From positions 248,001 to 312,000 of the IMG/VR virus record IMGVR_UViG_3300032116_000004: 64,000 nt of DNA, one strand, 5' to 3'. Shown one piece after another: positions 2,289 to 49,445 of this stretch. Position 1 is the first letter of the stretch. Every line of letters begins with the position of its first letter. The translations under genes and the position numbers were made by a program. A model generated the notes under the pieces. The model did no database searches, was not told where the DNA came from, and saw only the letters and a program-made list of their open reading frames with translations.

Positions 2289-2386
2289 TTATAGATAAAC
2301 GGATCTCTTTTGCGTAACTCTTTTAGTTTTTTGCGATAGCGTATTTCAAGTTTGATCCGGTTGATCAAGTTTGTTAACCATTTCAT
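2285..2386 (-). CDS. Unannotated 33-aa basic peptide MKWLTNLINRIKLEIRYRKKLKELRKRDPFIYK
   Basis: Read by hand. AGGAGGA Shine-Dalgarno at 2397-2391, ATG at 2386, and its TGA overlaps the carbamoyltransferase ATG (ATGA coupling). Confidence 0.75.
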   Translation of the reverse strand: MKWLTNLINRIKLEIRYRKKLKELRKRDPFIYK

Positions 2387-3521
2387 TTTTTCCTCCTATG
2401 ATTTGTATCTGTCGAGTTTGATAATCAGGATCACTCCAGCAATAGTCATAGACACATTCGGCATCACTGGTTTTAACTCTGTAGACATCTAGATGAGTAT
2501 TTAAACGGCTCCATATGGATTGATAATCATTTGTCCAAAAGGTATCAATGAGATCCACTTGACCGATTTGCGGATGCCCAATAGTTAAACTTTTGTCATT
2601 GGGATCAAATCCATTCACTGTTAGCCATTCACGGAACTCTTGTAATCTTATCTTTTGCCATTCGTAGTTGCCAGGATTGTTAGCCCACTCTATATCAAAG
2701 TCTCCTGCTGCCTCAGTCTGGCTACGCATGGTAGTTGAAATTAACTCACCCACACGACTGTCACGTCCTTCATCCTGGAACACTTCCCAATGATGTTTGC
2801 CCACTGCTTTGTTCACACCTACAAATACTCCGCCTATGGGTCGATTGATAGTTTCTATACCAAACAGCTCGTAGTCTTTTTCGTCTAACACAAATCTTGG
2901 TGCATTAAGCCAACACATCAGTTGACTGGGCCTTTGCCAAGCGGGCGCTTCAATCTGTTTTCGATAACTGAGAGCCCAAGATTCAAATTCGTGACACAAT
3001 AAATTCAATTGCCGGATATGCCAGCGTGTGGCAGCATTAGCTTTTAGATAGTATTCTTTGGGAGAGCCGCTGACACCTTGTAAATCTTCAAAATATCTAT
3101 GCAACCAGTTGAACTTGTCATGTATGATATTGCGACCGGCTGCGCGACCATCTATAGGTGTATCTGTGATACAATTCGCCATATCAAAATAGTCGTCGAT
3201 GTGATAACCAAGATTGGCTTGATTGATTGCCGCTATACTGAGATTGACCTGCTCTAGTATATAGGAACCGTTGCGAGCATGATCGACAAACCCAAAGAAA
3301 CAATAGTTTTTTTCTAGATGATAATCTTTCCGCAATAGATCATTGAGTGCTGACAGCCATTTATGACTGAGAGAGTTATCATAGATGTCCACATATACTG
3401 GCAGTAGATCGCCAGTATGACGATTTTGTAGATCAATCTGCAATCTATCTAATATCTTGCCACCAATCATACATGTCCTGATTTTGTTGTAATATATGTG
3501 CCATGGTATATTGATCACCAC
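2346..3521 (-). CDS. Hypothetical protein in the modification operon (true start probably near 3470)
   Basis: Long ORF co-oriented with and overlapping its neighbours; no recognisable motif. Confidence 0.75.
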   Translation of the reverse strand: MVINIPWHIYYNKIRTCMIGGKILDRLQIDLQNRHTGDLLPVYVDIYDNSLSHKWLSALNDLLRKDYHLEKNYCFFGFVDHARNGSYILEQVNLSIAAINQANLGYHIDDYFDMANCITDTPIDGRAAGRNIIHDKFNWLHRYFEDLQGVSGSPKEYYLKANAATRWHIRQLNLLCHEFESWALSYRKQIEAPAWQRPSQLMCWLNAPRFVLDEKDYELFGIETINRPIGGVFVGVNKAVGKHHWEVFQDEGRDSRVGELISTTMRSQTEAAGDFDIEWANNPGNYEWQKIRLQEFREWLTVNGFDPNDKSLTIGHPQIGQVDLIDTFWTNDYQSIWSRLNTHLDVYRVKTSDAECVYDYCWSDPDYQTRQIQIIGGKNEMVNKLDQPDQT

Positions 3522-4731
3522 GTATCTTTTCTAGTTCTAAAATCCTGCGCTTGCCTTTGATCAATCCTGCTTGATATTGATCAGGCCATTGTTCCGCAAA
3601 CGTGGGTCTTTGCTTGAGTTGTAGTAAAACATCTCGTAGTGCGCCACGTGTGGCAGGCACTATCTCATCCACTTTGCGATGTAATATTTCTCTAGGCAAT
3701 GCCAGCGGACTCATTAAAATGTCCGGAGTAAAACTAAACACAACTTTGGCCAAGATGTCAACACCTAGTTCATCGGCTGTGCGTTGCATCGACTCAACTT
3801 CAAACAAACCTGGCAGAGTCAAAGTAAAGTCCAATCGCATCTGTCTGCGATGTCGTGCGATTTCTAGGCCACGTTTAAAGTTTTCTAAAAATACGGGCCA
3901 GGCCAAACCGGTTCTGATGTATTCTCCGATGGGTCCTGTTCCATCGATGCTTGCACAGATTTGGAAGTCTCGTATATTTGCCAGCAAATCACGATAAAGA
4001 CTAATCCCATTATAATCCACGCGGCTAAGGTTGGTATTGTATCTTGCATAAAGTCTTGGGCCATCACCCAGTTCAATGATTCTTTTCATATAGCGCCAAT
4101 GCTGTTCATACATCAGCGGCTCTCCGCCCACCCAATAGATTTCTTCTACACGATGTTCTTCTACTGCTTGAGCAAACTCTGCTTCTACCTGTGTGTCCTG
4201 GAACTGTATGATTTCACGTTTGACATCAGGCCGCATCCAGTTGTTTTTGGGATTTGACCAGTCTACCATGTCGTGTTTTTTCTCTTCAGTTTCCCAAGAG
4301 CTGGAAAGCATGTCTCCGCACATGCGACATTTAAAGTTGCAAAGATTACTAAATCTGTAGTCCCAGCTCACTGGTTTCAGTGTGGTTACACCGTCGGGTG
4401 TGGTGGCTGCCATGGCTTCCTCATACTTGTGACCAAACAGTCCCCAAAAGTAACTGCGATAGACATCTGTATTCAATAACTTCTCATTGCACACCGCACA
4501 CTCTGGCAAGGTCTCTCCGGCCATCATGCGCCGTCTCACAGATTTCATGTGTTCACTGTTCCAATGTTCATCCAGTGTGATGGGAATATAACGTCCGCTG
4601 CCGGCGGCTGTGTCTATATACTGTTCAAAGTTCTGTGCAGGCTCACGACTGGCACAACACATCCTCCTCTCGGTCTGTGGCGAGAGATATGTGTGTGTCC
4701 ACGGAGCCATGCACAGTGTTTCAGACTTCAT
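3445..4731 (-). CDS. Radical SAM protein with N-terminal twitch/SPASM-like Cys domain
   Basis: CNFKCRMC (CxxxCxxC) and GGEP; N-terminal CMAPW...MCC...CAVC. Confidence 0.9.
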   Translation of the reverse strand: MKSETLCMAPWTHTYLSPQTERRMCCASREPAQNFEQYIDTAAGSGRYIPITLDEHWNSEHMKSVRRRMMAGETLPECAVCNEKLLNTDVYRSYFWGLFGHKYEEAMAATTPDGVTTLKPVSWDYRFSNLCNFKCRMCGDMLSSSWETEEKKHDMVDWSNPKNNWMRPDVKREIIQFQDTQVEAEFAQAVEEHRVEEIYWVGGEPLMYEQHWRYMKRIIELGDGPRLYARYNTNLSRVDYNGISLYRDLLANIRDFQICASIDGTGPIGEYIRTGLAWPVFLENFKRGLEIARHRRQMRLDFTLTLPGLFEVESMQRTADELGVDILAKVVFSFTPDILMSPLALPREILHRKVDEIVPATRGALRDVLLQLKQRPTFAEQWPDQYQAGLIKGKRRILELEKIRGDQYTMAHILQQNQDMYDWWQDIR

Positions 4732-5932
4732 AATCTATCACTCGTGCTAACTCCGGCGCTATCTGTGAAAGGTTCTGACGACGCCTTAGATCTAGATCTT
4801 TTATCTTTATCTTCAAAAGATTTCCATCAGTGCTGGCACCATTGATCATGAAATCTACCACGCGATCAAACTCAGATCGGAATGACTCGGGCACCCATTC
4901 ACTTGACAATCTCTGTCGAACTGCCTGTTTAGCACGTTCGGGCAGGTTAGCAATACTGAAATAATAAGGATCATGCAACATGTTCCAGTAGACAAAATCA
5001 AACTTTTGACGATCGATCCATTGTGCCACGTCTGACAGATACATCACGTTGAACGCATTGATGGTGCAACACACCTGTAGAGTGATGTTTGAAATCCTAG
5101 ATCTCATCTGTCGGAACAGTTCGATATTGTGATTGATTTCCGACCAGCCAGCATTGCTACGTTGATATTCAAATCTCTCACCTACGTCATCCACAGAAAA
5201 AGCGATTTCAACATGCCGGAAATGGCACCAGATGTCTTCGGCTTCTTCGGGATATTGTGTGCCGTTGGTGTTGTAGTGTATTTCAATTTGATGAGCATAT
5301 CCACGGTCTACCAGGCGGCGCAGTAGATCAAAATGCTCTCGGATCATGAAAGGTTCGCCACCAGTGAACTCAATGTATCGGACTTGGGCCATGGCCGAAT
5401 CCAGTTCGTGCCAAAACTGCTCGCTGTTGCGCGGCCATGCTCCATCACGTAACATTTGATAATGGAAACTTTTCTTTTTATCTTCTCTATCAACAATAAA
5501 GTTCAACTCTTCTGAAGCAAAAGTCGACGAAGACCATGAACCACAGATGCGGCATTTGAGATTACAGATATTACCTAATTTGAGATCCAAAAACATCAAA
5601 GGTTTAGCATCTGCTGTCCAATTGTCAGAAATGCCCATATGTTTGAGCCTATCTAGAGTATGCATCCTTTTACTGGTACGACCGGCACGTTCTTCTTGCC
5701 AACATCTACGACAGGTCTGTGGTTGCTGGCCATCTAAAAACTGCTGACGCAGATTTTTTAGATGTTGGCTGTTCTGTATCTGGTCAAAGGTAGAGTTTGT
5801 AAGTTGGAATTTTTTCCCTTGATCATCTACTATCTCGTCCATGGCCAAACAGCAAGGTCTCACTGTGCCTATGGGACTGGTTTCTAAGCTAACCCACGGT
5901 AACACACAGAATTTCTCGTGTGGTATTTTCAT
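4721..5932 (-). CDS. Radical SAM protein with N-terminal twitch/SPASM-like Cys domain
   Basis: CNLKCRIC, GGEPF and YNTNGT; N-terminal CVLPW...PCC...CRRC. Confidence 0.9.
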   Translation of the reverse strand: MKIPHEKFCVLPWVSLETSPIGTVRPCCLAMDEIVDDQGKKFQLTNSTFDQIQNSQHLKNLRQQFLDGQQPQTCRRCWQEERAGRTSKRMHTLDRLKHMGISDNWTADAKPLMFLDLKLGNICNLKCRICGSWSSSTFASEELNFIVDREDKKKSFHYQMLRDGAWPRNSEQFWHELDSAMAQVRYIEFTGGEPFMIREHFDLLRRLVDRGYAHQIEIHYNTNGTQYPEEAEDIWCHFRHVEIAFSVDDVGERFEYQRSNAGWSEINHNIELFRQMRSRISNITLQVCCTINAFNVMYLSDVAQWIDRQKFDFVYWNMLHDPYYFSIANLPERAKQAVRQRLSSEWVPESFRSEFDRVVDFMINGASTDGNLLKIKIKDLDLRRRQNLSQIAPELARVIDYEV

Positions 5933-7197
5933 TGCAAGGCCTCCAGTTCGGGTATCACAGACAGCAGATTCTGTCCGCGGATGGCGTCTAGTTCGTGAGT
6001 CTTGCGCCAGAATACCTCCAGTAATTGAGTGTTATCTGACCCCATCATAAAATTGATAGCCGATTCAAAACCCACCGTGGCACGTTGCAAAGGATCTTGT
6101 GTTCTCAACCAATCAAGGTGCTCTTCAAAGCGTATCCTTAGACGTTGTTTGTATTTCATAGGTGCTATGTCTATTCTATAGTGTGCTGGATCTTGCAAGA
6201 TATTGACATTGAGATCCTGCGCACGTATCAGTCCTTGCTCTACCCAAGATTTATGAAAATCAGGTAGATGCCATGCGTTCATGATACTCAGCGTAGGAGA
6301 AATATAGAAATCTACGTTGGGGCAGATATCTATCATCCTACGACGATTATCTTCTACTGTGTTCCAATTGGTACCATTGCGTATGTATTCAGCACGCAAG
6401 TCCATGGCATCCAGGCTGGCTCCTACTGCTACACTCTTAAACTTTTTCCAATAGTCAAACACATATCGATCTTTGAGTTTGACTTGCGTGAAGTTTGTAT
6501 TGTAGATCAGGCGCACATCAAATCGTTCTCTGCGTTCTAATTCTTCCAGGATGCGATAGTGCTCATCCATCATCAGAGGCTCGCCACCTGCAAAATATAT
6601 CTGCTCTACATAATCAATATGCGGTAACAATTGGTTCCACATATCTTCGGGATCGCGACCTGCAATGTTCAAAGGTCTATTGTGTTTGGCCCATTCAGGA
6701 CCGGCTAACTTGATCTGATCTTGATACCATGAACTGGAAAAGATATGCCCACAACTGCGACAACTGAGATTGCAAAGATTACTGAAACGTATATCCCAAT
6801 AAGTCATCTCAAACGGATTGCTTTCTAATTTCTTGATGTGATGACCGTGATGTTTGTTGGCTGATCTCCGACCTGAAAAAAATCCCGATTCCTCTTGTTC
6901 ATAGCATCGACCACAGGCCGGGTTGGGCCGTTCGGCTAACATGTCTTCTCGCAACTGTGTCATGGACGGACCTTGCCAAATTTCGGCCAAGGTATTCTTT
7001 CTGCAATCGCCCACTGGGTATCGCATCTCTGCATGACAGCAAGGATAGGCTTCACCTGTGGGATAAGCATGCAGGTGTATCCAAGGATAGATACAGAATG
7101 TTTTGCTGTCTTTCAGCAGAAATTGTTCGCGATCGTTGAGATCCGTTGGTCGGACTAAATCTGCGGAATTATATTGATATTGTGTCATACCACTCAC
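5929..7197 (-). CDS. Radical SAM protein with N-terminal twitch/SPASM-like Cys domain
   Basis: CNLSCRSC, GGEPL and YNTN; N-terminal CIYPW...PCC...CGRC. Confidence 0.9.
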   Translation of the reverse strand: MSGMTQYQYNSADLVRPTDLNDREQFLLKDSKTFCIYPWIHLHAYPTGEAYPCCHAEMRYPVGDCRKNTLAEIWQGPSMTQLREDMLAERPNPACGRCYEQEESGFFSGRRSANKHHGHHIKKLESNPFEMTYWDIRFSNLCNLSCRSCGHIFSSSWYQDQIKLAGPEWAKHNRPLNIAGRDPEDMWNQLLPHIDYVEQIYFAGGEPLMMDEHYRILEELERRERFDVRLIYNTNFTQVKLKDRYVFDYWKKFKSVAVGASLDAMDLRAEYIRNGTNWNTVEDNRRRMIDICPNVDFYISPTLSIMNAWHLPDFHKSWVEQGLIRAQDLNVNILQDPAHYRIDIAPMKYKQRLRIRFEEHLDWLRTQDPLQRATVGFESAINFMMGSDNTQLLEVFWRKTHELDAIRGQNLLSVIPELEALQ

Positions 7198-8527
7198 TCA
7201 ATGCAGGAAAAGTCCTGCGGAAATTTTTGCCACGGCGCCGATCATATTGCTCGTAAAATTGTTTAAAATCGTTGTGCAATCGCGGCATATCAAATGCATC
7301 TGAATGCGGAGTCTTGACCACGTCAAGATAATCTATCAATCGTTGCATGTGATTGCGTTCGTGTTCATGCATCATGACATTGTCAGTCCAGCGATCTAAC
7401 CAGGCCTGCAATCGATCTCTATGACGCATACGGATGTGATCAGGCAAAACCAGTGGTGATTGGAAACTGGGAAATCTCAGGATGTTCAGCGTGAAGTTAG
7501 GAAAGTCCGAACCATGGTCCTGTTTCCATAACATGAGATAGGTCAGGAACTCTGGCAGGCTTTCCAGGCACAAGGCATTAATGGTACACATCACATGCAA
7601 GCCTCGCAGTTTTTTACTCTGCATGATGCGTTCCATGTTGTCGGTCCACTGTCCATAGTTCAAACCATCGCGGATATATTCAGCATGAGGACCGATGCTC
7701 TCATTGGAAGTATACAGATCCAGTTCTACATCTTCGCAGGCATTGATAGCACGTTCTATCACATCATATTCCATGCCAAGATTTGAGTTGATGGCCAGGC
7801 GTGTTTGCGAACGTCCGCGATTTTGTTGGAACCAATCCAACAACTTCCAGGTATATCCGCTCATCAGTGGTTCACCACCGGTGATGCGCAGTTCTTTCAG
7901 TGTTCTATGTAGGTCTGATTCCCACCACTGGAAAAATGCGTCCACATAAGGATTCCGATCATTGAATGTATACAACTGACTGCTGTCATGAGCGTGAGTG
8001 AAATGATTACGACCATCTGATACCAGGCCGGTGTAAGCACCGTGTTGTTTAATATCCCGAACCCATGTAGAACTAAAAGCAGGATTGCAATAAGAACAAG
8101 CGAACTGGCAAGTCCTATCAAAGGCGATTTCCAAGGTTTGTAAATCCACGTCTTGGTCCGCTGGAGTATGGTATGCATCATCAAGGTCCTCGTCTGAATA
8201 TATCACTGTCTTATACACACGGTCGCTGACGTTGTCTCGACCTATGTCTTCAATCTTCCAGCAGTATTCGCACCCTTGTGGGCGCTCGCCGCGTTGCATC
8301 ATGCCTCGTTCGGATTTTTTTTTGGCAGTATTGTGCAAGGCTTTGGGATTGGCTTCTGCATCTTCTACGCTGACTTTGTGAGGCAGCGGGTGATGGCAAC
8401 TGGTAGTCATGCCGGAGCCTAGCCAAATAGTAGCGTTATACCATTTGGCTCCACAAAAACTATCGGATTTGATATCGATCACCCGACGTTTGTATTCAAT
8501 ATCTGTTTCGTTGTCTTTACGTGGCAT
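7169..8527 (-). CDS. Radical SAM protein with N-terminal Cys/His domain
   Basis: CQFACSYC and TGGEPL; N-terminal CGAKW...SCHH...CEYC. Confidence 0.9.
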   Translation of the reverse strand: MPRKDNETDIEYKRRVIDIKSDSFCGAKWYNATIWLGSGMTTSCHHPLPHKVSVEDAEANPKALHNTAKKKSERGMMQRGERPQGCEYCWKIEDIGRDNVSDRVYKTVIYSDEDLDDAYHTPADQDVDLQTLEIAFDRTCQFACSYCNPAFSSTWVRDIKQHGAYTGLVSDGRNHFTHAHDSSQLYTFNDRNPYVDAFFQWWESDLHRTLKELRITGGEPLMSGYTWKLLDWFQQNRGRSQTRLAINSNLGMEYDVIERAINACEDVELDLYTSNESIGPHAEYIRDGLNYGQWTDNMERIMQSKKLRGLHVMCTINALCLESLPEFLTYLMLWKQDHGSDFPNFTLNILRFPSFQSPLVLPDHIRMRHRDRLQAWLDRWTDNVMMHEHERNHMQRLIDYLDVVKTPHSDAFDMPRLHNDFKQFYEQYDRRRGKNFRRTFPALSEWYDTISI

Positions 8528-9536
8528 GCATGAACTTTTGGAATTTTACAGTAAATGTTTTCTGTTGGTTAGTATGTAGTTCTTGGGCGTGCTGTTGGTT
8601 ATATAAACAGATGTCTCGTGTTTCGATCCAAAATTGGTCTAGATCTTGATCGCATAACCACTGGACTTCTTGTATCAATCTGTCCAGTCTCCCCTTACCA
8701 TCTATTATAGTATCAAACGATTCATCGATCAACGATCCGAATGTTCTAAATCCCATGCGATGTAGGTCTCGATAGAATCCCATGTTGGCACAAATAACAA
8801 AAGGATGTGCCGCTAATATTGGCTTGTAGGTTTTCTCTGTGCGGAAACTGTGCGGATATTCAAACACAGTTTCACTGACTACGCTGAAGTAAGTGTCATT
8901 GAACTGTGGTGCATAGATCACGCCATCTAACCATGATGGTTCTGGTTGAATTTCATACCGTGATGGCAAAGATTTTTCGGATAAATCCATATGCTCAACA
9001 TAGACTCTGTTGAAATCTCTATGCCCCCATGTATCATAGTTCTCTAGACAAGACCACAATGCTCGATCCAACAATCCAAAAAATTTCAATTTGGCGATCA
9101 AGTATTTCCTATGCGGACGCAGTTTTCGATTGGTAAAAAGAAATTTATAAGGTCGAGTAACCTGTTGGCTTAATACCAGGTTGGTTTCTTGGCTGCCGAT
9201 AGTGGCCCGTAAAAAATGCTCGTTGTTGAGATTTTGTATATCCGGATCAGAATCACCGCCTGTTATCCATCTAAGAGATCCTCTTTGGAACCATGTATAG
9301 TAGAGATGATGTTTGACTATGTGCCACTGAGTGGCCACTGATTCATCTGTTTTTTCTACAGCGATAGTGCTGCCATTTTCCAAACTCTTGATCACCAACT
9401 CTGGTCGCATAACCAGAGTCTTCAAGGATATAGCATAACACCCTTGTCGATCACTTAGATAGTCAACAACGATGTCATCTGCTGTATCGAGATACCCAAG
9501 TGGCAGTCCAGGCTCAACAATAATATTACCATTCAT
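8517..9536 (-). CDS. Putative glycosyltransferase (GT-B; GT10 fucosyltransferase-like C-terminal motif), paralog 1
   Basis: FSVVSET...RTEKTYKPI...PFVI...GFRTF resembles the GT10 nucleotide-sugar motif (FxLxFEN...YxTEK...xPxVxG). Confidence 0.5.
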   Translation of the reverse strand: MNGNIIVEPGLPLGYLDTADDIVVDYLSDRQGCYAISLKTLVMRPELVIKSLENGSTIAVEKTDESVATQWHIVKHHLYYTWFQRGSLRWITGGDSDPDIQNLNNEHFLRATIGSQETNLVLSQQVTRPYKFLFTNRKLRPHRKYLIAKLKFFGLLDRALWSCLENYDTWGHRDFNRVYVEHMDLSEKSLPSRYEIQPEPSWLDGVIYAPQFNDTYFSVVSETVFEYPHSFRTEKTYKPILAAHPFVICANMGFYRDLHRMGFRTFGSLIDESFDTIIDGKGRLDRLIQEVQWLCDQDLDQFWIETRDICLYNQQHAQELHTNQQKTFTVKFQKFMHAT

Positions 9537-9892
9537 GCCTGATTATCGCCTGGAACGATTCTATAATTGTCTTCCACAGAATCTGGTGTGCTGACTTCTA
9601 TGATTGTTCCTGCTTCAATACAGATCAACTGATGAGGCTGGCAAGGTGGATTGTGCCAAGTTGCCCCTTCATTTAATTCTTTTTCATGAGATTCAGCGGT
9701 ATCAGTATCTATCCAACGAATTAGAAATTTGCCATTTTGGACATACCAAGTTTCATCTTTGTCTCGATGGAAATGCATACTGAAGCGGGCACCGGTCTCA
9801 AAATTTAAAAACTTTGCACAATATTGGTTATTAGTTGCCCAAATAAATTCAGATCCCCATTTTTTAGGAACCAGTCCTGTCAATCTGGTCAT
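9533..9892 (-). CDS. Cupin-fold protein (sugar isomerase/epimerase-like)
   Basis: WGSE...SMHFHRDKDETWYV...PPCQPHQL...IEVS cupin metal-binding motifs. Confidence 0.8.
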   Translation of the reverse strand: MTRLTGLVPKKWGSEFIWATNNQYCAKFLNFETGARFSMHFHRDKDETWYVQNGKFLIRWIDTDTAESHEKELNEGATWHNPPCQPHQLICIEAGTIIEVSTPDSVEDNYRIVPGDNQA

Positions 9893-10944
9893 GATTCAAA
9901 TACATGATGCATTTTGTGATATTGTTCACGACTAAACTCAATGAACCTTTCACGGTTATAGCGAAGATCGGGCAACATATCTTGATAGATGTCTTCGATC
10001 TCTGACAGAGTCATATCGCATAACCAATGTAATACACTCATCACACTACCATGCTGGTCCTCTGAGGTTTCTATATCAACATGTGGCCAATAATGGTTAA
10101 ATGTTTTAAATCCTCGATTACGCAACCATGGATATATCCTAGTCTGCCCATGTATGACAAAAGGTCTTAATCCAATCATTGGTTTCCATGTTTTCTCAGT
10201 TACAAACAAGGGATGCCAATTGTTAAACTCTGTTTCGCTGACCACATGTAAAAAATGATTTTTCCACACAGTTAGAGGACCTAGTCCAAACAAATCGCAA
10301 GGAATTCCACCACAGTCATCCTCTGTAATAAAATCATCTAAGTTCTCACCCAATGTTATGTTAGGGCCCATCATACCATCAGCATAGATATCTGCATGTT
10401 CTTTTGATCCGCCACCTAAAGTAATGATTCCCCTACGATCAAGACGAGATGCCAATATAAGATTAGTGAGCTCCACACGGTGTAGTCTTGGTTTGCGTTG
10501 TAGACAAACGAATACGTGTTTAACTGATTGAAGGCTGATTTGATCCAAAGTGGGTATGGTCATTAACTTATAGGCGGCTGCCGCGTGCCAATTCCATTGA
10601 TACTTTTGATTTTCCCATGTGCCGATGCGTATTACTTTCTCGCACTTGATTTGATTGATAATACTATCTATTAGATCTTCGCGCAGATACACAGGATCGA
10701 TTGTAGATAACAAAAACAAATTGTCAAATTTAGCGCAATCTTTGTAGATCAATTTTTCTAACTTTTGCCATTGTCCGTTATCAAACTGAGGACCAAACCA
10801 AGTCATATTCAATAATAAATTCTTTTCATCTTTGAACTTAGACTCAATTTGTTCTGCAGTCTTTTGCAATACTTCTCGTTCCAAAGGCCCATAGTGATAA
10901 GCAAGTGGGAACGTGGTTCCAATAACAGTTATCATGATAGACAA
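9889..10944 (-). CDS. Putative glycosyltransferase (GT10-like motif), paralog 2
   Basis: FLHVVSET...VTEKTWKPM...PFVIHG...GFKTF. Confidence 0.5.
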   Translation of the reverse strand: MSIMITVIGTTFPLAYHYGPLEREVLQKTAEQIESKFKDEKNLLLNMTWFGPQFDNGQWQKLEKLIYKDCAKFDNLFLLSTIDPVYLREDLIDSIINQIKCEKVIRIGTWENQKYQWNWHAAAAYKLMTIPTLDQISLQSVKHVFVCLQRKPRLHRVELTNLILASRLDRRGIITLGGGSKEHADIYADGMMGPNITLGENLDDFITEDDCGGIPCDLFGLGPLTVWKNHFLHVVSETEFNNWHPLFVTEKTWKPMIGLRPFVIHGQTRIYPWLRNRGFKTFNHYWPHVDIETSEDQHGSVMSVLHWLCDMTLSEIEDIYQDMLPDLRYNRERFIEFSREQYHKMHHVFES

Positions 10945-11867
10945 TTTTGTTTATACCATTGGATTGTGATATCTATACCCTGTGATAAATTATATTTTGG
11001 TTGCCACCCCATGGATTTTATTTTACTGTTGTCTAAAGTTCTAACAATAGTAGCTGTTGGTTTTGTGATATCCCATTGTATATCCCCTGCAAAACCAGAT
11101 AAGTGCTTTACTAGATCGGCGGCAGTCTTAAGGTTAACTGGATTACCGGCAGAAAGATTTATTGGCTCACTGGCAGAATAATTTTGCATACAAAAAATAC
11201 AAGCGTCGGCAGCGTCGTCCACAAACATAAAATCTCTTACCTGACTTCCATCTCCCCAAAGAGATACTGCGGCGTCTTGACGTTTGACAGCATTGACAAA
11301 TTTGCTTATAAAATCACTCATGACATGAGATTTGACATTATCAAAAGTATCGTTAGGCCCGTAAAGGTTACCGGGCATCACTGTGATAAAATCACATCCC
11401 CATTGTTTTCTAAAATACTGAGCCATTTTGATCCCAGCAATTTTTGCCACGGCGTAGGCTTCGCTAATTGGTTCTAAATATCCAGATAAAAGTTGATCTT
11501 CAGTGATAGGTATTTGACAGTCTTTGGGATAGGCAGAACTACTACCAGTAAACAAAAGTTTTTTACACTGATATTTGCGAGACACATCAAAAACATTGTT
11601 TTGTATTTCTAAGTTATACAGCATTGTTTCTCCCCAATCCTGACTCAAAAGTCCTATCAACTTAGCCGCTACTAAAAATACATACTCTGGCCTATGCCGA
11701 TTGAACCAAGCATCGACCTGTGTTTTATTTCTCAGATCTAATTCTTCGGGACTAGGATATAGTATGTTAGTATATCCTTGTGATCGTAATTGTCTCACTA
11801 TAGCCGATCCAAGGTGTCCACGAAATCCACCTGCTACAAATATTTTAGACTGTTTTTCCATGTTCAT
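10932..11867 (-). CDS. fcl: GDP-4-keto-6-deoxy-sugar reductase (Fcl/GDP-fucose synthase family, extended SDR)
   Basis: GGFRGHLGSA Rossmann motif, YAVAK catalytic YxxxK, MPGNLYGPND and SHV. GSSSAYP replaces the canonical GSSCIYP. Confidence 0.85.
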   Translation of the reverse strand: MNMEKQSKIFVAGGFRGHLGSAIVRQLRSQGYTNILYPSPEELDLRNKTQVDAWFNRHRPEYVFLVAAKLIGLLSQDWGETMLYNLEIQNNVFDVSRKYQCKKLLFTGSSSAYPKDCQIPITEDQLLSGYLEPISEAYAVAKIAGIKMAQYFRKQWGCDFITVMPGNLYGPNDTFDNVKSHVMSDFISKFVNAVKRQDAAVSLWGDGSQVRDFMFVDDAADACIFCMQNYSASEPINLSAGNPVNLKTAADLVKHLSGFAGDIQWDITKPTATIVRTLDNSKIKSMGWQPKYNLSQGIDITIQWYKQNCLS

Positions 11868-12859
11868 CTGTCCTGATTGTCGTAATAAATTATCTGACTA
11901 CCTAGATATTCAAATAAAATTGGCACACTGGTCAATCCTAGTGCCTCTTCAACTTTTTGTTTGGCATCCAGCGGTGTGACAAAAAGCATAAATCCACCAC
12001 CGCCTGCCCCCAACAACTTACCTCCCAGAGCTCCTGCTGTTAGAGCACGATCATATATTTCATCAATTTTCTGATTGGTCGATTCGGGCTGTATTGCCTT
12101 TTTTAGAATCCATTGTTCGTTTAGAGCCTCGGCAAAGTCTGTCAGTCTGTTTTGATTTGCATCAAACAATATACTCTGCGCTCGATCAGTTAAAGCATTC
12201 ATATCCTGCAATTTTTTTTCTTGTTGCCCAAGTAAAGCAATAGTTTTTTTCGCTAACTGACCGCTCTCTCTGCAATCTTGTGTATGAAACATCTGCATTG
12301 ATGATTCCAATTCTCGGTGTATGCCAGAATCAAGTATCAAGGGATTGACCGTAAAATCTTGATGTCCACCAAAATTGATTTTATTGAAACCACCAAATGC
12401 GGCGGCCACCTGATCTTGGCTACCCACATCTTGTTTCAAAACTTTCTGCTCGATATACAAGGCATCTAATGCTAACTGACGTTTAGTCTTGAGTTGATTA
12501 GTCAAGGTATAGAGACCGTGTAGAAGACCTACTGTGAAACTACTGCTAGAACCTATGCCTGTGCGATTAGGCAAATCTCCGTGATGTGTAATATCGATAC
12601 CAAAATCAATATTACAAAACTTCAAACATTCTCTGATCACAGGAATAGATATTTCATCTATGGAATTGGTTTCTTGTACCTCATAATATCTTATGCGATA
12701 TTTGTAATCAAACACTTGAGGCAATTTCCTAATAACAATAAAACTATATTTGTTAATAGTGGTGCTGATTACTGATCCCGGATGATACTCATACCAATCT
12801 GGATAGTCGGTCATGCCTCCGAAAAAACTTACTCTATAAGGAGTTCTAACTATGATCAT
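11864..12859 (-). CDS. hddA: GHMP kinase, D-glycero-D-manno-heptose 7-phosphate 1-kinase-like
   Basis: RTPYRVSFFGGMTD, DLPNRTGIGSSSS, GSQDQVAAAFGG and GGKLLGAGGGGF. Confidence 0.85.
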   Translation of the reverse strand: MIIVRTPYRVSFFGGMTDYPDWYEYHPGSVISTTINKYSFIVIRKLPQVFDYKYRIRYYEVQETNSIDEISIPVIRECLKFCNIDFGIDITHHGDLPNRTGIGSSSSFTVGLLHGLYTLTNQLKTKRQLALDALYIEQKVLKQDVGSQDQVAAAFGGFNKINFGGHQDFTVNPLILDSGIHRELESSMQMFHTQDCRESGQLAKKTIALLGQQEKKLQDMNALTDRAQSILFDANQNRLTDFAEALNEQWILKKAIQPESTNQKIDEIYDRALTAGALGGKLLGAGGGGFMLFVTPLDAKQKVEEALGLTSVPILFEYLGSQIIYYDNQDR

Positions 12860-13869
12860 CTTATCAAATAATTTTTATTGATCTCGTTAACCTTCTCTCG
12901 CCAATGGTCTAGTAGATCTTGCATGGTCCGATCAAAGGTAATTTCCGGTTTCCATCCAGTATGCTTACGAAATTTTTCTGTGTTTGGTATCTGGAGATCT
13001 GCATCTATTGGACGCAATCGGTCAAGGTCGACTTCTACCCGTATGCTGTCCTGACAGGCACTTAATGATATTAACTTATCAAGGATATCCTGCACTCGGC
13101 ATACATGCGTGCCTCCTATGTTGTAATATTCTCCAGGGACAGGATTTACGGTAACAAGCATAAGATAAGCTCGCACAGCATCTCTGACATCAGCAACAGT
13201 CCGTAAACTATCAAGATTGCCCACCTTGACAACAGGTTCTATTTTACCTTTTTCAATCATAGCGATCTGTTTGGCAAAAGATGATTCAGCAAACACATCT
13301 CCGCGACGCGGACCGGTATGTGTGAACATTCTAGTGGTCATGACTTTTAATCCGTATGCTTCGGCATAAAATCTTCCCAACAAGTCTGTACCAACCTTGC
13401 TAATAGCATATGGCGAGGCTGGATGAAAAGTGCAATTTTCATCTATAGGAAGTTTTTCTTTAGGAACTCGACCAAATACTTCTGAACTAGCACAAACATG
13501 TATTATTGCGTCAGGACAGTGAATTTTACATGCTTCTAACAATCTTGCTGTGCCTTGGATGTTAGTGTTAAGAGTTTCTACAGGACTATCAAAACTAGTC
13601 TTTGGAAAACTTTGTGCCGCAAGGTGGAAAACATAATCGGGCTTTGAATTTTTTATGATTTTTTGCAATGACGGATCATCATTTAAATCACCATACTCGA
13701 GCATGATGCGTTTTTTTTGATTTATATCGGGGATCAAATGATTGATGTTGTCAAGAGGACTCCGCCATCTTATTACACCAACAATATTCCAGTCAGTTTC
13801 TTTAAGGATCAGATCGGCTAGATGGCTTCCGACCATGCCTGTGATTCCGGTGATAAGTGCAGTAGTCAT
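12856..13869 (-). CDS. dmhA: GDP-sugar 4,6-dehydratase, DmhA/WcbK (GDP-manno-heptose dehydratase)-like
   Basis: ALITGITGMVGSHLAD, IRWRSPLDNINHL, HLAAQSFPKTSF, SPYAISK, THTGPRRGDVF and RLRPIDADLQ fit the DmhA/WcbK pattern better than ordinary Gmd. Confidence 0.75.
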   Translation of the reverse strand: MTTALITGITGMVGSHLADLILKETDWNIVGVIRWRSPLDNINHLIPDINQKKRIMLEYGDLNDDPSLQKIIKNSKPDYVFHLAAQSFPKTSFDSPVETLNTNIQGTARLLEACKIHCPDAIIHVCASSEVFGRVPKEKLPIDENCTFHPASPYAISKVGTDLLGRFYAEAYGLKVMTTRMFTHTGPRRGDVFAESSFAKQIAMIEKGKIEPVVKVGNLDSLRTVADVRDAVRAYLMLVTVNPVPGEYYNIGGTHVCRVQDILDKLISLSACQDSIRVEVDLDRLRPIDADLQIPNTEKFRKHTGWKPEITFDRTMQDLLDHWREKVNEINKNYLIR

Positions 13870-13890
13870 TTTGCTTGGTTAATATATAAT

Positions 13891-15339
13891 TTATTGTTTG
13901 ATTAATTGCTTGGCTAGATATCCACAATCGGCCCACCATTCGACCATTTCTGGGAATACTTTGAGAAATCTCGTGCCGCGGCGTCGGTCATGTTCATCGA
14001 AAAATCGGAACCAATCCGCACGCTGACGGCGCACATAATCAGGATCTAGTTTCTTTCCTTCTCGCATCCACGCGATGTCTCTATCCAATCTCTGTAGTTC
14101 GTAATCTTTAAAGCCTTTGAATCGTCGTTCTTCGGTTTCGAGATTTTTCATCATGAAAACCCAAACTTCTTCCAGTTTGTCTGCGTAACTTTCGGGCAAG
14201 ATCTGCAGGCTCTGCCAGGCTGGATTTCTCAACACAGGAGTATCGAACCAAACACGCTGATAAGTGTTAGAATAGATCTGTCTTAATCCCAACATCCCTA
14301 CCATGAGTTCCTGGAAACTAGTCACTGACAAGTTGTTCATGGTTATGATAAATGTGATGGAACTGCGATGTGGTATTTCAGTGAGGAATTGATTCACACG
14401 ATCCCATAACAGGGCAAAATCCATACCATGCCGTATATACTCGGCACGGTCCATCCAAGCATCAAGGCTCACATACTGCATGAAATGCTCCACACGCTCG
14501 TTGTCGCAGATCATTTTCACATAACCTTTGTAGCGTTGCCAAAGACGTTCGTCGGCACAGAAGTTTGATGTTACATTAAGATGCAGTCGCGGATTGTGAT
14601 GAGCCATCACATAGTCAAACACTTTATAAGTGTTCTTGTCCATCATAGGCTCGCCGCCGGTCATACGGAAATGTTCTAGTTCCGGATACAGCGCAGGCCA
14701 CCACTGCCAAAATGCTTCAAGATAGGGATTGTGTTCACGAAAAGGTATGGGTTTGCGATCTCCTTGGAAGTAAGCAGGATCGTTATGAGGTGTAGCAGTG
14801 GGCCAGGCGCCGTGACGTTCTGCTTCTTCCATCCAGGACGTAGAAAATTGTGGACTGCAATAACTACATTTGAGATTGCAAACAGAATTGAAATTGACTT
14901 CCACATAACTAGGAGTGACATCTTGGTCCCATGGCGCGGTCACTATCTTTTCAAAATCACGAGCCGCCCAGGGTTCTCCGGATCTGTAATGACGATCCGA
15001 CATTTCTCCGAGATCTTCCATGTTCCAACAATACTGACATTCGCCCGGGCGTGTGCCTTCTAACATCAATCGGCGTTGCTGTTTTTTGTGTTCAGTATTG
15101 TGGATACCCGATGGACTGCGTTGTATGTCCTCGATGCGTATTTTGTGCAACGGAGGATGATAGCAGGAATTGGTATGGCCAGTGGTGAGATGTAAACTGA
15201 CTTGTTTCCACTTGGCCAAACAAAGACTAGAACTTACAGTATCGAGTTTTTGTTTGATTATTTCTGCATCACTTAAGAATTTTGACTTGAAGTCTTGTAA
15301 TACTTCATCGCCTTTGTTTTGTTCAGACAATATTGACAA
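13891..15339 (-). CDS. Radical SAM protein with N-terminal Cys/His domain
   Basis: CNLKCSYC and MTGGEP; N-terminal CLAKW...SCYH...CQYC. Same subtype as 7169..8527. Confidence 0.9.
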   Translation of the reverse strand: MSILSEQNKGDEVLQDFKSKFLSDAEIIKQKLDTVSSSLCLAKWKQVSLHLTTGHTNSCYHPPLHKIRIEDIQRSPSGIHNTEHKKQQRRLMLEGTRPGECQYCWNMEDLGEMSDRHYRSGEPWAARDFEKIVTAPWDQDVTPSYVEVNFNSVCNLKCSYCSPQFSTSWMEEAERHGAWPTATPHNDPAYFQGDRKPIPFREHNPYLEAFWQWWPALYPELEHFRMTGGEPMMDKNTYKVFDYVMAHHNPRLHLNVTSNFCADERLWQRYKGYVKMICDNERVEHFMQYVSLDAWMDRAEYIRHGMDFALLWDRVNQFLTEIPHRSSITFIITMNNLSVTSFQELMVGMLGLRQIYSNTYQRVWFDTPVLRNPAWQSLQILPESYADKLEEVWVFMMKNLETEERRFKGFKDYELQRLDRDIAWMREGKKLDPDYVRRQRADWFRFFDEHDRRRGTRFLKVFPEMVEWWADCGYLAKQLIKQ

Positions 15340-16267
15340 TCTCCGTTGAATACTTTTGATCTAGCAGAAGATTGTAGTTATGATCTAGAATAGATTGCAT
15401 ATCCTGATACATGTGATACAATTCTGACTTAGATTTTTTGACCAAGTCATCAATGAGTTTTAGTGTTGATTGCAATCTATCTTTGGTATCAAACCCATCA
15501 TAGTCTTCGTTCCAAAAATTCCAAAATGTCTTAAACCCCATCTGCCGTAGATACTCTAGATAATTCCGGCTGGCAAAAACAATAAATGGTTTTTTCATCC
15601 ACATCGGTCTAAAAGTCTTTTCGGTAGCATAAAAAGTTTCCCCTGACACATGTGATTCAACTACCACATCAACTAGAATATTTTTATAGTAATTTGTCAG
15701 CGGATCTGAAAAATCATAACCTTCACTGTCAGTGTATCTATCTGGACTAGACAACAACAAAGGAAGATCATCAATCAACACACTGGCGTCTTTGACACTT
15801 TCAATGCGATAAGATAATAGTTTGTCAAATTCAAAATGCACCAAATCATCCACACCGGTATTAGCCGAGAAATGTATCAGGCTTTTACGGCCGTGATAGC
15901 GTCTTAAATGTCCTGCAATAGCCAGTCGAGCCGCTGTGGGTCTCCCAAACAATGCATAGAAGACATGCGTTTGATCCCAAGAATGCATGCTGTTATCTAT
16001 GGATTCAATTTTTTTTGGCCAGTGATTTTCTAAAAATTTTATATGATAATAAGGATGTGATTCCAATGGATTGGCCGTGATAACAGTAACATTTTTATGT
16101 TCCATGGATTCTAATAATCGATAAACTCCCAAAGTTTTCATGCTCACAGCTTCGGGGGCCACAGTAATCTCAATCGGAAGACCTTGATTAGCAAACAAAA
16201 ATCTAACAAATTCATCTTTGTTCCAAAACTTATCACTGGTTGCAAGGATCTGGAAAGATACTGTCAT
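15323..16267 (-). CDS. Putative glycosyltransferase (GT10-like motif), paralog 3
   Basis: VDVVVES...ATEKTFRPM...PFIVF...GFKTF. ATG at 16267 overlaps the upstream TAA. Confidence 0.5.
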   Translation of the reverse strand: MTVSFQILATSDKFWNKDEFVRFLFANQGLPIEITVAPEAVSMKTLGVYRLLESMEHKNVTVITANPLESHPYYHIKFLENHWPKKIESIDNSMHSWDQTHVFYALFGRPTAARLAIAGHLRRYHGRKSLIHFSANTGVDDLVHFEFDKLLSYRIESVKDASVLIDDLPLLLSSPDRYTDSEGYDFSDPLTNYYKNILVDVVVESHVSGETFYATEKTFRPMWMKKPFIVFASRNYLEYLRQMGFKTFWNFWNEDYDGFDTKDRLQSTLKLIDDLVKKSKSELYHMYQDMQSILDHNYNLLLDQKYSTEIVNIV

Positions 16268-48488: not shown

Positions 48489-48516
48489 TTGACAAAGATG
48501 CCAAATGTTGTATAAT
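48489..48516 (+). promoter_or_regulatory. Consensus sigma70 promoter for the late-sigma/gp47/gp46 operon
   Basis: TTGACA (48489-94), 16-nt spacer, TATAAT (48511-16); SD AGGAG at 48528-32. Confidence 0.8.
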
Positions 48517-48543
48517 AACTACAATATAGGAGAATCATCAACG

Positions 48544-49431: not shown

Positions 49432-49445
49432 TATACTGCTACTCT

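What the first reader, a model, noticed from the sequence alone, without database searches (positions are those of the whole stretch)
3445..15339. Radical SAM paralogs with a permuted architecture: auxiliary Fe-S (twitch/SPASM-like) domain placed N-terminally
Seen: each of the five proteins begins with C-x-x-[PK]-W...x-C-[CHY]...C-x-x-C-[WY] before the CxxxCxxC core, as do those at 49446 and 51609. There are two subtypes: CxxPW...CC (3445, 4721, 5929) and CxAKW...SC[HY]H (7169, 13891). Established: SPASM/twitch domains are normally C-terminal in peptide- and protein-modifying radical SAM enzymes (anSME, PqqE, AlbA) and in the sugar dehydrogenase BtrN. Inference: this is a distinct phage-expanded family, possibly BtrN-like sugar oxidases or protein maturases.
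Basis: partly seen in the sequence, partly recalled or inferred. Interest (0 to 1): 0.6.

Follow-up and report, generated by a model that had tools for sequence, protein, structure and literature searches.

The report
Phage arrays of N-terminal-twitch radical SAMs
A huge freshwater phage carries twelve copies of an uncharacterised radical SAM enzyme whose extra iron-sulfur domain sits in front of the catalytic barrel instead of behind it. NCBI already catalogues this family, and gene neighbours suggest it tailors sugars of a surface glycan.

Summary
All five ORFs, plus those at 49446 and 51609, are full-length members of NCBIfam NF033640 (N_Twi_rSAM, "twitch domain-containing radical SAM protein"), scoring 212-391 bits against a 170-bit cut-off. 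Each has four invariant N-terminal Cys (C-x17-C-x~41-52-C-x2-C) ahead of CxxxCxxC.

The N-terminal domain is a real twitch. It matches Pfam SPASM. A family profile aligns it to the C-terminal twitch of BtrN with all four Cys in register. A confident AlphaFold model superposes best on the auxiliary-cluster domains of BtrN and anSME.

So the permuted order is real but already curated. It is not MoaA, anSME or viperin.

New here:
- The 316-kb phage genome holds 12 copies.
- The five-gene array is conserved, orthogroup by orthogroup, in 80 of 80 related viral loci.
- It travels with a NodU-type carbamoyltransferase and Pfam-less, glycosyltransferase-like genes, beside baseplate and tail-fibre genes.
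- The family is not phage-specific: 45 of 201 genomes sampled from the phylum of a MAG whose record title reads Bdellovibrionales carry it, often in many copies.
- Long relatives are repeatedly fused to TPR/Sel1 repeats.

Function is untested. The best guess is radical tailoring of glycan sugars. Direct modification of a protein is the main rival.

The parts
3445..4731 (-). N_Twi_rSAM paralog (428 aa), subtype CxxPW...CC; twitch domain about 4441-4728
   Evidence: NF033640 284.4 bits, Pfam SPASM at residues 7-82 and Radical_SAM at 126-310. Clear orthologs in 59 of 80 viral loci.
4721..5932 (-). N_Twi_rSAM paralog (403 aa), subtype CxxPW...CC; twitch domain about 5651-5929
   Evidence: NF033640 342.7 bits, Pfam SPASM at residues 9-78, E 8.9e-7. 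Clear orthologs in 59 of 80 loci.
5929..7197 (-). N_Twi_rSAM paralog (422 aa from GTG; probably 419 aa from ATG at 7188), subtype CxxPW...CC; twitch domain about 6853-7119
   Evidence: NF033640 391.1 bits, Pfam SPASM at residues 35-99, E 2.7e-12. AlphaFold model pLDDT 95.8. Clear orthologs in 77 of 80 loci.
7169..8527 (-). N_Twi_rSAM paralog (452 aa), subtype CxxKW...SCHH; twitch domain about 8204-8479
   Evidence: NF033640 296.9 bits. Twitch HMM E 7.5e-16 at residues 20-103. Clear orthologs in 63 of 80 loci.
13891..15339 (-). N_Twi_rSAM paralog (482 aa, TTG start), subtype CxxKW...SCYH; twitch domain about 14977-15246
   Evidence: NF033640 305.7 bits. Twitch HMM E 2.3e-17. Clear orthologs in 63 of 80 loci.
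49446..50594 (+). N_Twi_rSAM paralog (382 aa) between the late sigma factor (gp55-like) and SbcD (gp47-like) genes
   Evidence: NF033640 212.5 bits. Neighbours identified by PHROGs.
51609..53099 (+). N_Twi_rSAM paralog (496 aa) with an extra ~125-aa N-terminal extension, between the SbcD and SbcC genes
   Evidence: NF033640 276.4 bits over residues 130-491. Twitch HMM at residues 130-208.
801..2288 (-). NodU/TobZ-family carbamoyltransferase, a co-conserved partner of the array
   Evidence: Pfam Carbam_trans_N and Carbam_trans_C; NodU model 138.8 bits, below its cut-off. Present in 47 of 80 viral loci. Lies within 5 kb of family genes in 3 of 5 further genomes of the Bdellovibrionales-titled MAG's phylum, and inside that MAG's own cluster.
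2346..3521 (-). Conserved protein of unknown function at the end of the array
   Evidence: No Pfam, PHROG or NCBIfam hit. Present in 46 of 80 viral loci. No PDB match by profile.
8517..9536 (-). First of three paralogous Pfam-less proteins with a GT10-like '...ETxF...TEKTxKP...PF' motif (the others are 9889-10944 and 15323-16273); possible fucosyltransferase-like enzymes
   Evidence: The family is present in 48-55 of 80 viral loci. ESM-feature neighbours are GT10 clusters at only 0.78, a lead and no more. No Pfam or PDB profile hit.
9533..13869 (-). Insert of sugar-nucleotide genes within the array: cupin, GT-like ORF, GDP-L-fucose-synthase-like, HddA-like GHMP kinase, GDP-mannose-4,6-dehydratase-like
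   Evidence: Pfam and NCBIfam hits, all below the equivalog cut-offs. Cupin, GHMP kinase, Fcl-like and GMD-like genes occur in only 0-8 of 80 related loci, so they are accessory rather than core.
16267..17196 (-). Most widely co-conserved unknown partner, with a DxD-like 'ILIDGDN' motif; possibly a GT-A glycosyltransferase
   Evidence: Present in 63 of 80 viral loci. Invariant or near-invariant D64 and D66. ESM features point weakly to GT2 and GT92 (0.85-0.87). No Pfam or PDB hit.

Best explanation
These are members of the uncharacterised N_Twi_rSAM family (NF033640).

Shown:
- A helical C-terminal domain follows the barrel.
- The twitch domain carries four invariant Cys, with almost the same spacing as the four ligands of BtrN's auxiliary [4Fe-4S] cluster.

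Inferred mechanism:
- The CxxxCxxC cluster cleaves SAM to the 5'-deoxyadenosyl radical, which abstracts a hydrogen atom from the substrate.
- The auxiliary cluster, ligated by all four Cys, acts as an electron conduit. This is the arrangement that supports alcohol-to-ketone oxidation in BtrN. The outcome here could be oxidation, epimerisation or another redox-neutral rearrangement.

Inferred role:
- The five anciently diverged paralogs of the array each perform a different tailoring step on sugars of one glycan or sugar-derived molecule.
- They work with a NodU-type O-carbamoyltransferase and glycosyltransferase-like proteins.
- In this phage the product probably decorates the virion (tail fibre or baseplate) or the host surface.
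For: Identity:
- NF033640 at 212-391 bits for all seven window ORFs.

Twitch homology:
- Pfam SPASM at the N-terminus.
- Family profile against the PDB aligns profile positions 7-82 to BtrN residues 162-240, E 1.4e-7 to 5.1e-7, with all four Cys aligned.
- The domain model has pLDDT 97.2. Out of 48,161 chains its best structural match is BtrN 163-245 (Z 4.8, rmsd 2.8 A over 77 residues); the next is Z 2.6.
- It also matches anSME 251-348 at Z 5.4 (rmsd 4.3 A over 70 residues), and the SPASM or twitch regions of CteB, SuiB and SpeY.
- Almost all of the top 17 Foldseek hits are SPASM/twitch enzymes.

Core:
- A normal radical SAM barrel. BlsE, anSME, SuiB, SkfB, viperin and MoaA tie at Z 12-14.

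Multi-step pathway:
- 80 of 80 viral loci hold 2-8 copies (co-oriented in all but two loci), and each window paralog has clear orthologs in 59-77 of them. Paralogs are only 19-27% identical to the 5929 paralog.

Glycan context:
- Carbamoyltransferase in 47 of 80 viral loci, and next to family genes in 4 of 6 genomes of the Bdellovibrionales-titled MAG's phylum that were checked.
- GDP-sugar genes lie inside this array.
- A DegT aminotransferase and dehydratase lie nearby in relatives.
- A Bacteroidota cluster has a methyltransferase-GT2 fusion, a GT-C-like protein and a GDSL esterase next to four copies.
Against: - No enzyme of the family has been characterised, and no paper on it was found.
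- The GDP-sugar genes of this window are absent from most related loci (0-8 of 80).
- The glycosyltransferase assignment of the co-conserved unknowns rests only on motifs and weak language-model similarity. Pfam and PDB profile searches found nothing.
- Recurrent TPR/Sel1 fusions and neighbouring fibre-like proteins fit a protein substrate equally well.
- Seven of the twelve paralogs lie outside any sugar context. Two of them sit between recombination and late-transcription genes.
- I could not obtain model coordinates, so whether the twitch cluster sits at the BtrN-equivalent position relative to the active site is untested.
Confidence: 0.5

Rival explanations
1. Protein-modifying enzymes. 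The paralogs act directly on side chains or backbone of a large structural protein such as a tail fibre or the 4835-aa neighbour (in bacteria, secreted fibre-like proteins). The chemistry would resemble that of anSME or the sactisynthases. In the fused bacterial versions, TPR/Sel1 repeats recruit the protein substrate.
For: - Six of ten long family representatives are fused to TPR or Sel1 repeats, at either end.
- About 50 TPR-fused copies occur in one MAG titled Elusimicrobia.
- The phage array is co-directional with and adjacent to baseplate and fibre genes, including a Peptidase_G2 chaperone-domain protein.
- A Bacteroidota locus places two copies beside a T9SS-secreted protein with a Peptidase_S74 fibre-chaperone domain.
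- anSME, SuiB, SkfB and CteB are among the best structural matches.
Against: - No RRE/PqqD-type peptide-recognition domain was detected in the phage proteins at E <= 0.01.
- No precursor-like small ORF is evident, as the genes overlap tightly.
- The recurrent carbamoyltransferase and sugar genes are unexplained by this reading.
- TPR domains also occur on protein glycosyltransferases (own knowledge), so the fusions do not separate the two readings.
Confidence: 0.25
2. Biosynthesis of a diffusible sugar-derived small molecule, aminoglycoside- or nucleoside-like, rather than a polymer-bound glycan. The radical SAMs, carbamoyltransferase, aminotransferase and kinase would form a secondary-metabolite pathway.
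For: - The enzyme mix resembles aminoglycoside clusters (resemblance from own knowledge): a BtrN-like twitch enzyme, a TobZ/NodU-family carbamoyltransferase, a DegT aminotransferase nearby, and a GHMP kinase.
- BlsE, which acts on a nucleoside sugar, is the top core match at Z 13.8.
Against: - The same enzyme classes are typical of O-antigen and capsule loci (own knowledge).
- The array sits in a structural-gene block.
- No transporter or resistance gene was noticed.
- The core matches are statistically tied.
Confidence: 0.12
3. Nucleotide or DNA-modifying enzymes, acting like viperin, MoaA or QueE on NTPs or bases, used by the phage for DNA hypermodification or nucleotide-pool manipulation.
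For: - The best weak hits outside the family are viperin, MoaA and QueE models.
- Two paralogs and a short third radical SAM sit among recombination genes.
- Four Arg are invariant or nearly so across the family and could bind phosphates (inference).
Against: - Scores are far below cut-offs: 19-39 bits against 180 for viperin, 22-37 against 284 for MoaA.
- The five-gene array is linked to sugar and structural genes, not to replication or nucleotide genes.
- The family is common in bacterial chromosomes within similar clusters.
Confidence: 0.06
4. Members of an already characterised group (MoaA, anSME/AslB, PqqE) that only appear rearranged. Some JGI records name relatives in this way.
For: Automatic JGI names such as 'sulfatase maturation enzyme AslB' and 'MoaA/NifB/PqqE/SkfB family'.
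Against: - Scores: anSME model 15.7 bits against 484, MoaA at most 37 against 284; the only hit to a PqqE model came from the short non-family radical SAM at 54869-55492.
- All members have the auxiliary domain at the N-terminus and none at the C-terminus.
- None of the 14 model-organism control genomes reaches the family cut-off.
Confidence: 0.02

Closest known systems
NCBIfam NF033640, N_Twi_rSAM (twitch domain-containing radical SAM protein)
   Same: All seven window ORFs match end to end above the curated cut-off. The architecture is the same: twitch, then radical SAM barrel, then a helical tail.
   Different: Nothing structural differs, so these are members. The family has no assigned function. 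Subtype B (CxxKW...SC[HY]H) was seen only in viral loci among those sampled.
BtrN (butirosin 2-deoxy-scyllo-inosamine dehydrogenase; PDB 4M7S, 4M7T)
   Same: The twitch domain has four Cys at nearly the same spacing. It is the best sequence match (E about 1e-7) and is among the best structural matches (Z 4.8, rmsd 2.8 A over 77 residues) to the N-terminal domain. The context is sugar-related.
   Different: BtrN's twitch follows the barrel, whereas here it precedes it. The cores are only remotely alike: the BtrN core stretch is not significant in the profile search. There is an additional ~80-residue helical C-terminal domain.
anSME and other SPASM enzymes (SuiB, CteB, SkfB, PqqE)
   Same: The N-terminal domain superposes on the first half of their SPASM domains (anSME 251-348, Z 5.4, rmsd 4.3 A over 70 residues). 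The cores are among the best matches at Z 12.5-13.2.
   Different: There is only one auxiliary cluster motif, with no Cx5Cx3C. The domain order is reversed. No RRE domain is present. Scores against their family models are negligible.
GDGT-MAS / Tes tetraether lipid synthase (PDB 7TOM)
   Same: A radical SAM enzyme with an auxiliary [4Fe-4S] domain N-terminal to the barrel (PMC9433317). It is the top Foldseek hit of the whole model.
   Different: Its N-terminal cluster uses three Cys (C73, C77, C80) plus a His, lies on the protein surface, and is not described there as a twitch. It also has rubredoxin and C-terminal cluster domains.
BlsE and DesII (radical SAM enzymes acting on nucleoside or nucleotide sugars)
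   Same: BlsE is the best core match (Z 13.8, rmsd 3.5 A over 218 residues) and DesII scores Z 11.8. Both have sugar substrates.
   Different: They are tied with peptide-modifying enzymes, so no specific relationship can be claimed. Their family models are matched only at 24 bits or not at all.

Membership tests
NCBIfam NF033640 (N_Twi_rSAM) | Whole-protein HMM score at or above the curated cut-off of 170 bits, with near full-length coverage | tested here: met
   284.4, 342.7, 391.1, 296.9 and 305.7 bits; 212.5 and 276.4 bits. Profile coverage is about 1-398 of 398.
NCBIfam NF033640 (N_Twi_rSAM) | Cys-rich twitch domain located N-terminal to the CxxxCxxC radical SAM motif | tested here: met
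   Four invariant Cys precede CxxxCxxC in 72 of 72 aligned members. The twitch HMM hits only N-terminal residues of the 12 paralogs.
SPASM/twitch radical SAM subgroup (SFLD subgroup 17; RadicalSAM.org Megacluster-1-1) | Auxiliary-cluster domain homologous to SPASM/twitch | tested here: met
   Pfam PF13186 at 47.2 and 29.6 bits (above the 21.5 gathering score) and 19.7 bits. Profile match to the BtrN twitch. Structural matches.
SPASM/twitch radical SAM subgroup (SFLD subgroup 17; RadicalSAM.org Megacluster-1-1) | Auxiliary domain positioned C-terminal to the barrel, as the literature describes it (PMC9477430) | tested here: not met
   The domain lies at residues ~2-140, before the barrel, in all 12 paralogs. 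The literature statement was read.
SPASM/twitch radical SAM subgroup (SFLD subgroup 17; RadicalSAM.org Megacluster-1-1) | The domain actually binds a [4Fe-4S] cluster near the active site | not testable with these tools
   This needs Fe/S analysis, EPR or a structure.
BtrN-type twitch dehydrogenases | Four-Cys auxiliary motif C-x17-C-x44-C-x2-C | tested here: met
   Spacings here are 17-18, 41-52 and 2. All four Cys align with BtrN in the HMM alignment. BtrN ligand numbering is from own knowledge.
BtrN-type twitch dehydrogenases | Related catalytic core and substrate pocket, with dehydrogenase activity on an aminocyclitol or sugar | tested here: inconclusive
   The BtrN core stretch is not significant in the profile search (i-Evalue 100-600). 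Activity cannot be tested here.
MoaA (GTP 3',8-cyclase) | TIGR02666 score at or above 284 bits | tested here: not met
   Best scores are 22-37 bits.
anSME / AslB | NF010308 score at or above 484 bits, with a full seven- or eight-Cys C-terminal SPASM domain | tested here: not met
   15.7 bits. There is no Cys-rich domain at the C-terminus.
Viperin family | NF038283 score at or above 180 bits | tested here: not met
   19.6-39.3 bits.
RiPP radical SAM maturases | RRE/PqqD-like leader-peptide recognition domain and an adjacent precursor peptide gene | tested here: not met
   Pfam scans at E <= 0.01 list only Radical_SAM and SPASM. The genes overlap with no room for a small ORF. A precursor encoded elsewhere is not excluded.

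The most novel reading that the evidence does not exclude
A conserved block forms a previously undescribed radical glycan-tailoring (or glycoprotein-tailoring) pathway. The block consists of five to eight anciently diverged N-terminal-twitch radical SAM enzymes, a NodU-type carbamoyltransferase and several Pfam-less glycosyltransferase-like proteins. It is shared between huge freshwater phages and bacteria of the phylum of the Bdellovibrionales-titled MAG. The phages would use it to build an unusual, heavily modified sugar decoration on their tail fibres, baseplate or host envelope. Each paralog would catalyse a distinct C-H functionalisation, so the family would hold several new radical SAM chemistries.
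Probability: 0.3. Interest if true: 0.75.

Novelty: new member of a known kind. Interest (0 to 1): 0.5.

Why it matters
SPASM and twitch domains are described in the literature as C-terminal appendages. A family of thousands of sequence clusters with the domain in front of the barrel is catalogued but has never been studied biochemically.

This phage lineage offers a compact test set. It has five co-transcribed, deeply diverged paralogs with conserved partners, all modelled at very high confidence.

Working out their substrates could reveal new radical sugar or protein chemistry. It could also explain why huge phages invest about 5% of their genes in oxygen-sensitive enzymes placed next to their host-recognition apparatus.

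If it turns out to be ordinary, it is still a well-defined annotation. These ORFs should be called N_Twi_rSAM family proteins, not AslB, MoaA or PqqE.

Tried and rejected
- Megablast of the whole region against 50,697 deposited phage genomes found nothing. tblastn with the 5929 protein found only four distant records at ~23% identity: Ralstonia phage RsoM2USA, Vibrio phages K566 and K567, and one marine virus. No cultured model phage is therefore at hand.
- Literature searches for an N-terminal twitch or SPASM domain, for NF033640, or for radical SAM plus jumbo phage plus carbamoyltransferase found no paper on this family.
- I tried to name the co-conserved unknowns. Pfam, PHROGs and NCBIfam found nothing. 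A Pfam scan of 37 diverse GT-like homologs found nothing. Profile searches of three families against PDB sequences found nothing meaningful. ESM-feature look-alikes gave only weak leads to GT10, GT2 and GT92.
- One single-copy bacterial context was uninformative: LysR regulators, a thioesterase and a tRNA synthetase.
- One exact-protein look-up found no record.
- The whole-model fold search cannot show the permutation, because sequential aligners follow the barrel. The domain was therefore folded and searched alone.
- I could not test whether the N-terminal twitch occupies the same position relative to the barrel as in BtrN, because model coordinates are not exposed.
- MoaA, anSME, viperin and PqqE membership was rejected on score.
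- Read laying and complex prediction were not used. No alternative genetic code was used.

Full report
WHAT IS THERE

The window is bases 248001-312000 of a 315,778-bp virus record rated 91% complete. It encodes T4-like core genes: a gp55-like late sigma factor, SbcD (gp47) and SbcC (gp46). The closest deposited relatives of SbcC are the PA5oct-type Pseudomonas jumbo phages at 51% identity.

Near-identical DNA occurs in 20 public runs, from 18 studies; the 11 not labelled 'fungus metagenome' are labelled freshwater, lake-water or aquatic.

The five minus-strand ORFs named in the finding and the two plus-strand ORFs at 49446 and 51609 all match NCBIfam NF033640 end to end. This model is N_Twi_rSAM, "twitch domain-containing radical SAM protein". 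Scores are 212-391 bits against a curated cut-off of 170. The whole genome holds twelve such genes plus two unrelated radical SAM genes.

THE OBSERVATION

An alignment of the twelve paralogs and 60 viral orthologs shows these invariant features:
- four Cys in the N-terminal ~90 residues;
- the CxxxCxxC triad;
- the GGE SAM-binding motif;
- R107, N232, S258 and R270.

The spacing is C-x17/18-C-x41-52-C-x2-C, followed after about 45-50 residues by CxxxCxxC.

CxxP[WF]...CC occurs in the 3445, 4721 and 5929 groups. CxxKW...SC[HY]H occurs in the 7169 and 13891 groups and in two further paralogs elsewhere in the genome.

A hidden Markov model of the N-terminal domain alone hits exactly the twelve paralogs among 348 predicted proteins of the genome. 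The hit is always at the N-terminus, with E from 5e-7 to 2e-34.

IS THE N-TERMINAL DOMAIN A TWITCH?

Sequence evidence:
- Pfam's SPASM model matches residues ~7-99 of three of the five proteins, with E down to 2.7e-12.
- A profile of 99 family members searched against all PDB sequences aligns its positions 7-82 to residues 162-240 of BtrN, which is BtrN's C-terminal twitch domain. E is 1.4e-7 to 5.1e-7, and all four Cys, the G-x4-C element and the CxxC are in register.

Structural evidence:
- The full-length AlphaFold model is very confident (pLDDT 95.8, pTM 0.93), as is the isolated domain (pLDDT 97.2).
- An exhaustive structural comparison of the domain with 48,161 chains puts BtrN 163-245 first (Z 4.8, rmsd 2.8 A over 77 of 89 residues). 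The next chain scores Z 2.6.
- A second look at Foldseek's list gives anSME 251-348 (Z 5.4, rmsd 4.3 A over 70 residues), BtrN (Z 4.8 and 4.3), CteB 342-392, SuiB 338-425 and SpeY 169-285. All of these are auxiliary-cluster domains.

The Z values are modest, as expected for an 89-residue metal-free model. The agreement between sequence and structure, and the specificity of the hit list, make the assignment secure.

The barrel itself is a standard radical SAM core. It is equally close to BlsE, anSME, SuiB, SkfB, viperin and MoaA at Z 12-14. A helical C-terminal domain of ~80 residues follows it.

I could not test whether the N-terminal twitch sits at the same place relative to the active site as in BtrN, because coordinates are not exposed.

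IS IT ALREADY KNOWN?

Yes, as an architecture. The NCBIfam model's short name and description state it. The nearest ESM Atlas cluster is automatically named "putative twitch domain-containing radical SAM protein".

The RadicalSAM.org paper says that SPASM and twitch domains lie C-terminal to the barrel. It notes in passing that some Megacluster-1-1 members have conserved Cys N-terminal to it, without structures (PMC9477430).

I found no paper that characterises the family. GDGT-MAS has an N-terminal auxiliary cluster, but with three Cys plus a His and on the protein surface (PMC9433317).

The proteins are not MoaA (at most 37 bits against 284), anSME (15.7 against 484) or viperin (at most 39 against 180).

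HOW BIG AND HOW WIDESPREAD IS THE FAMILY?

- An exhaustive search of 1.84 billion cluster representatives finds 10,300 clusters at E <= 1e-3 and 1,359 at E <= 1e-30.
- Only 4 of 50,697 deposited phage genomes have a distant relative.
- None of 14 model-organism genomes reaches the cut-off.

The family is not phage-specific:
- 3 of 301 sampled Bacteroidota genomes carry it. One of these is a MAG whose two carrier contigs are misbinned relatives of this phage, with gp46 at 70% identity.
- 2 of 201 genomes of the phylum of an Elusimicrobia-titled MAG carry it.
- 45 of 201 genomes of the phylum of a Bdellovibrionales-titled MAG carry it, often with 7-11 copies on megabase contigs.
- The Elusimicrobia-titled MAG itself has about 50 copies in tandem arrays.

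"Phage-expanded" is therefore only half right.

THE ARRAY IS AN OLD MULTI-ENZYME MODULE

All 80 related viral loci fetched carry 2-8 family genes within about 21 kb, with a mean of 5.1; in all but two loci they are co-oriented.

Each of the five window paralogs has unambiguous orthologs in 59-77 of those loci, at a median identity of 43-69%. The paralogs share only 19-27% identity with the 5929 paralog.

This pattern indicates five distinct, long-maintained functions rather than recent duplication.

WHAT TRAVELS WITH THE ARRAY

Counts are out of the 80 viral loci:
- a NodU/TobZ-family carbamoyltransferase, 47;
- an unknown protein (window 2346), 46;
- three paralogous Pfam-less proteins with a GT10-like motif, 48-55;
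- an unknown with a DxD-like motif (window 16267), 63;
- two more unknowns, 54-56.

The GDP-fucose-synthase-like, GMD-like, HddA-like kinase and cupin genes that split this particular array occur in only 0-8 of 80 loci. They are an accessory insertion.

Immediately downstream on the same strand lie structural genes:
- a protein with a Peptidase_G2 chaperone domain;
- a 4835-aa ORF;
- gp6-like baseplate genes;
- gp5/VgrG-like baseplate genes.

The carbamoyltransferase link recurs in cellular genomes. It lies inside the cluster of 9 or more radical SAM genes in the Bdellovibrionales-titled MAG. It lies within 5 kb of family genes in 3 of 5 further genomes of that phylum. My rough estimate of the chance rate is below 10% per genome.

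Two Bacteroidota contexts differ from each other:
- One locus puts four copies next to a methyltransferase-GT2 fusion, a GT-C-like protein and a GDSL esterase.
- Another puts two copies next to six PhyH/WelO5-type dioxygenases, a methyltransferase and a T9SS-secreted protein with a fibre-chaperone domain.

Long family members are repeatedly fused to TPR or Sel1 repeats, at either end.

MOST LIKELY MECHANISM

Shown: two cluster-binding motifs, a SAM-binding motif and a BtrN-type four-Cys twitch.

Inferred chemistry: the enzymes cleave SAM reductively, abstract a hydrogen atom, and use the fully Cys-ligated auxiliary cluster as an electron conduit, as in BtrN and anSME.

Inferred role: the recurrent partnership with an O-carbamoyltransferase, with sugar-nucleotide and glycosyltransferase(-like) genes, and the position next to host-recognition genes make stepwise tailoring of sugars in a surface or virion glycan the best-supported role. 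I put about 0.5 on this overall; the enzyme identity alone is above 0.9.

Rivals:
- Direct modification of a fibre or other protein is the main rival (about 0.25). The TPR/Sel1 fusions and fibre neighbours support it.
- A diffusible aminoglycoside-like product (about 0.12).
- Nucleotide or DNA modification (about 0.06).

VERDICT

The finding is a correct reading of a real and unusual architecture that NCBI curators have already catalogued but nobody has characterised.

This analysis adds:
- the structural confirmation of the twitch;
- the twelve-copy load in this phage;
- the conserved five-orthogroup array with its partner genes in hundreds of uncultivated huge phages;
- the large cellular reservoir in the phylum of the Bdellovibrionales-titled MAG;
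- the TPR/Sel1 fusions.

I rate it a new member of a known kind, of moderate interest as a genome-mining target.

Noticed in passing
window 22757-37264 (minus strand): A single 4835-aa ORF lies directly downstream of the radical SAM and glycan block and upstream of gp6-like and gp5/VgrG-like baseplate genes. It is a candidate giant fibre or a substrate of the modification genes. It was not analysed.
   Followed up: no
window 48505-55492 (plus strand): Radical SAM genes alternate with T4-like core genes in this order: late sigma factor, N_Twi_rSAM, SbcD, N_Twi_rSAM, SbcC, then a short 207-aa radical SAM. The short one is not in the family (best hit viperin-like at 56.7 bits, below the cut-off).
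   Followed up: partly
genome G000:C1:229201-230388 (outside the window): This is a fourteenth radical SAM gene (395 aa), with a Cys-rich C-terminal tail instead of an N-terminal twitch. The twitch HMM does not hit it. The genome therefore mixes radical SAM architectures.
   Followed up: partly
L006 and L007 (G002, MAG titled 'uncultured Elusimicrobia bacterium', contigs C126 and C22): Tandem arrays of 543-1128-aa genes, each consisting of a long TPR array fused to a complete N_Twi_rSAM unit. About 50 copies across the 2.9-Mb MAG score over the family cut-off, an extreme expansion of unknown meaning.
   Followed up: partly
L021 (G082, Bacteroidota chromosome contig of 1.46 Mb): Two family members sit beside six consecutive PhyH/WelO5-type Fe(II)/2-oxoglutarate dioxygenase genes, a methyltransferase, a reductive-dehalogenase-like ferredoxin protein and a T9SS-secreted protein with a Peptidase_S74 fibre-chaperone domain. 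The locus mixes aerobic and radical C-H functionalising enzymes.
   Followed up: partly
L001, L002 (G001, MAG titled Haliscomenobacter sp., contigs C3 and C1, 148 and 183 kb): These two contigs carry 74-75% identical orthologs of the array and a gp46 homolog at 70% identity. They are relatives of this phage binned into a bacterial MAG, which is either contamination or a weak hint at the host.
   Followed up: partly
window 22-804 (plus strand) and L005/L008: The unknown ORF at the left edge of the window has homologs in 21 of 80 viral loci, and inside the radical SAM cluster of the Bdellovibrionales-titled MAG (E 2e-31). This is another shared partner of unknown function.
   Followed up: no
L014 (ENA contig of 47 kb): A more distant relative (41% identity for the 5929 ortholog) has eight consecutive family genes, followed by the carbamoyltransferase, a DegT aminotransferase and a 4,6-dehydratase. 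The array can therefore be even longer.
   Followed up: partly
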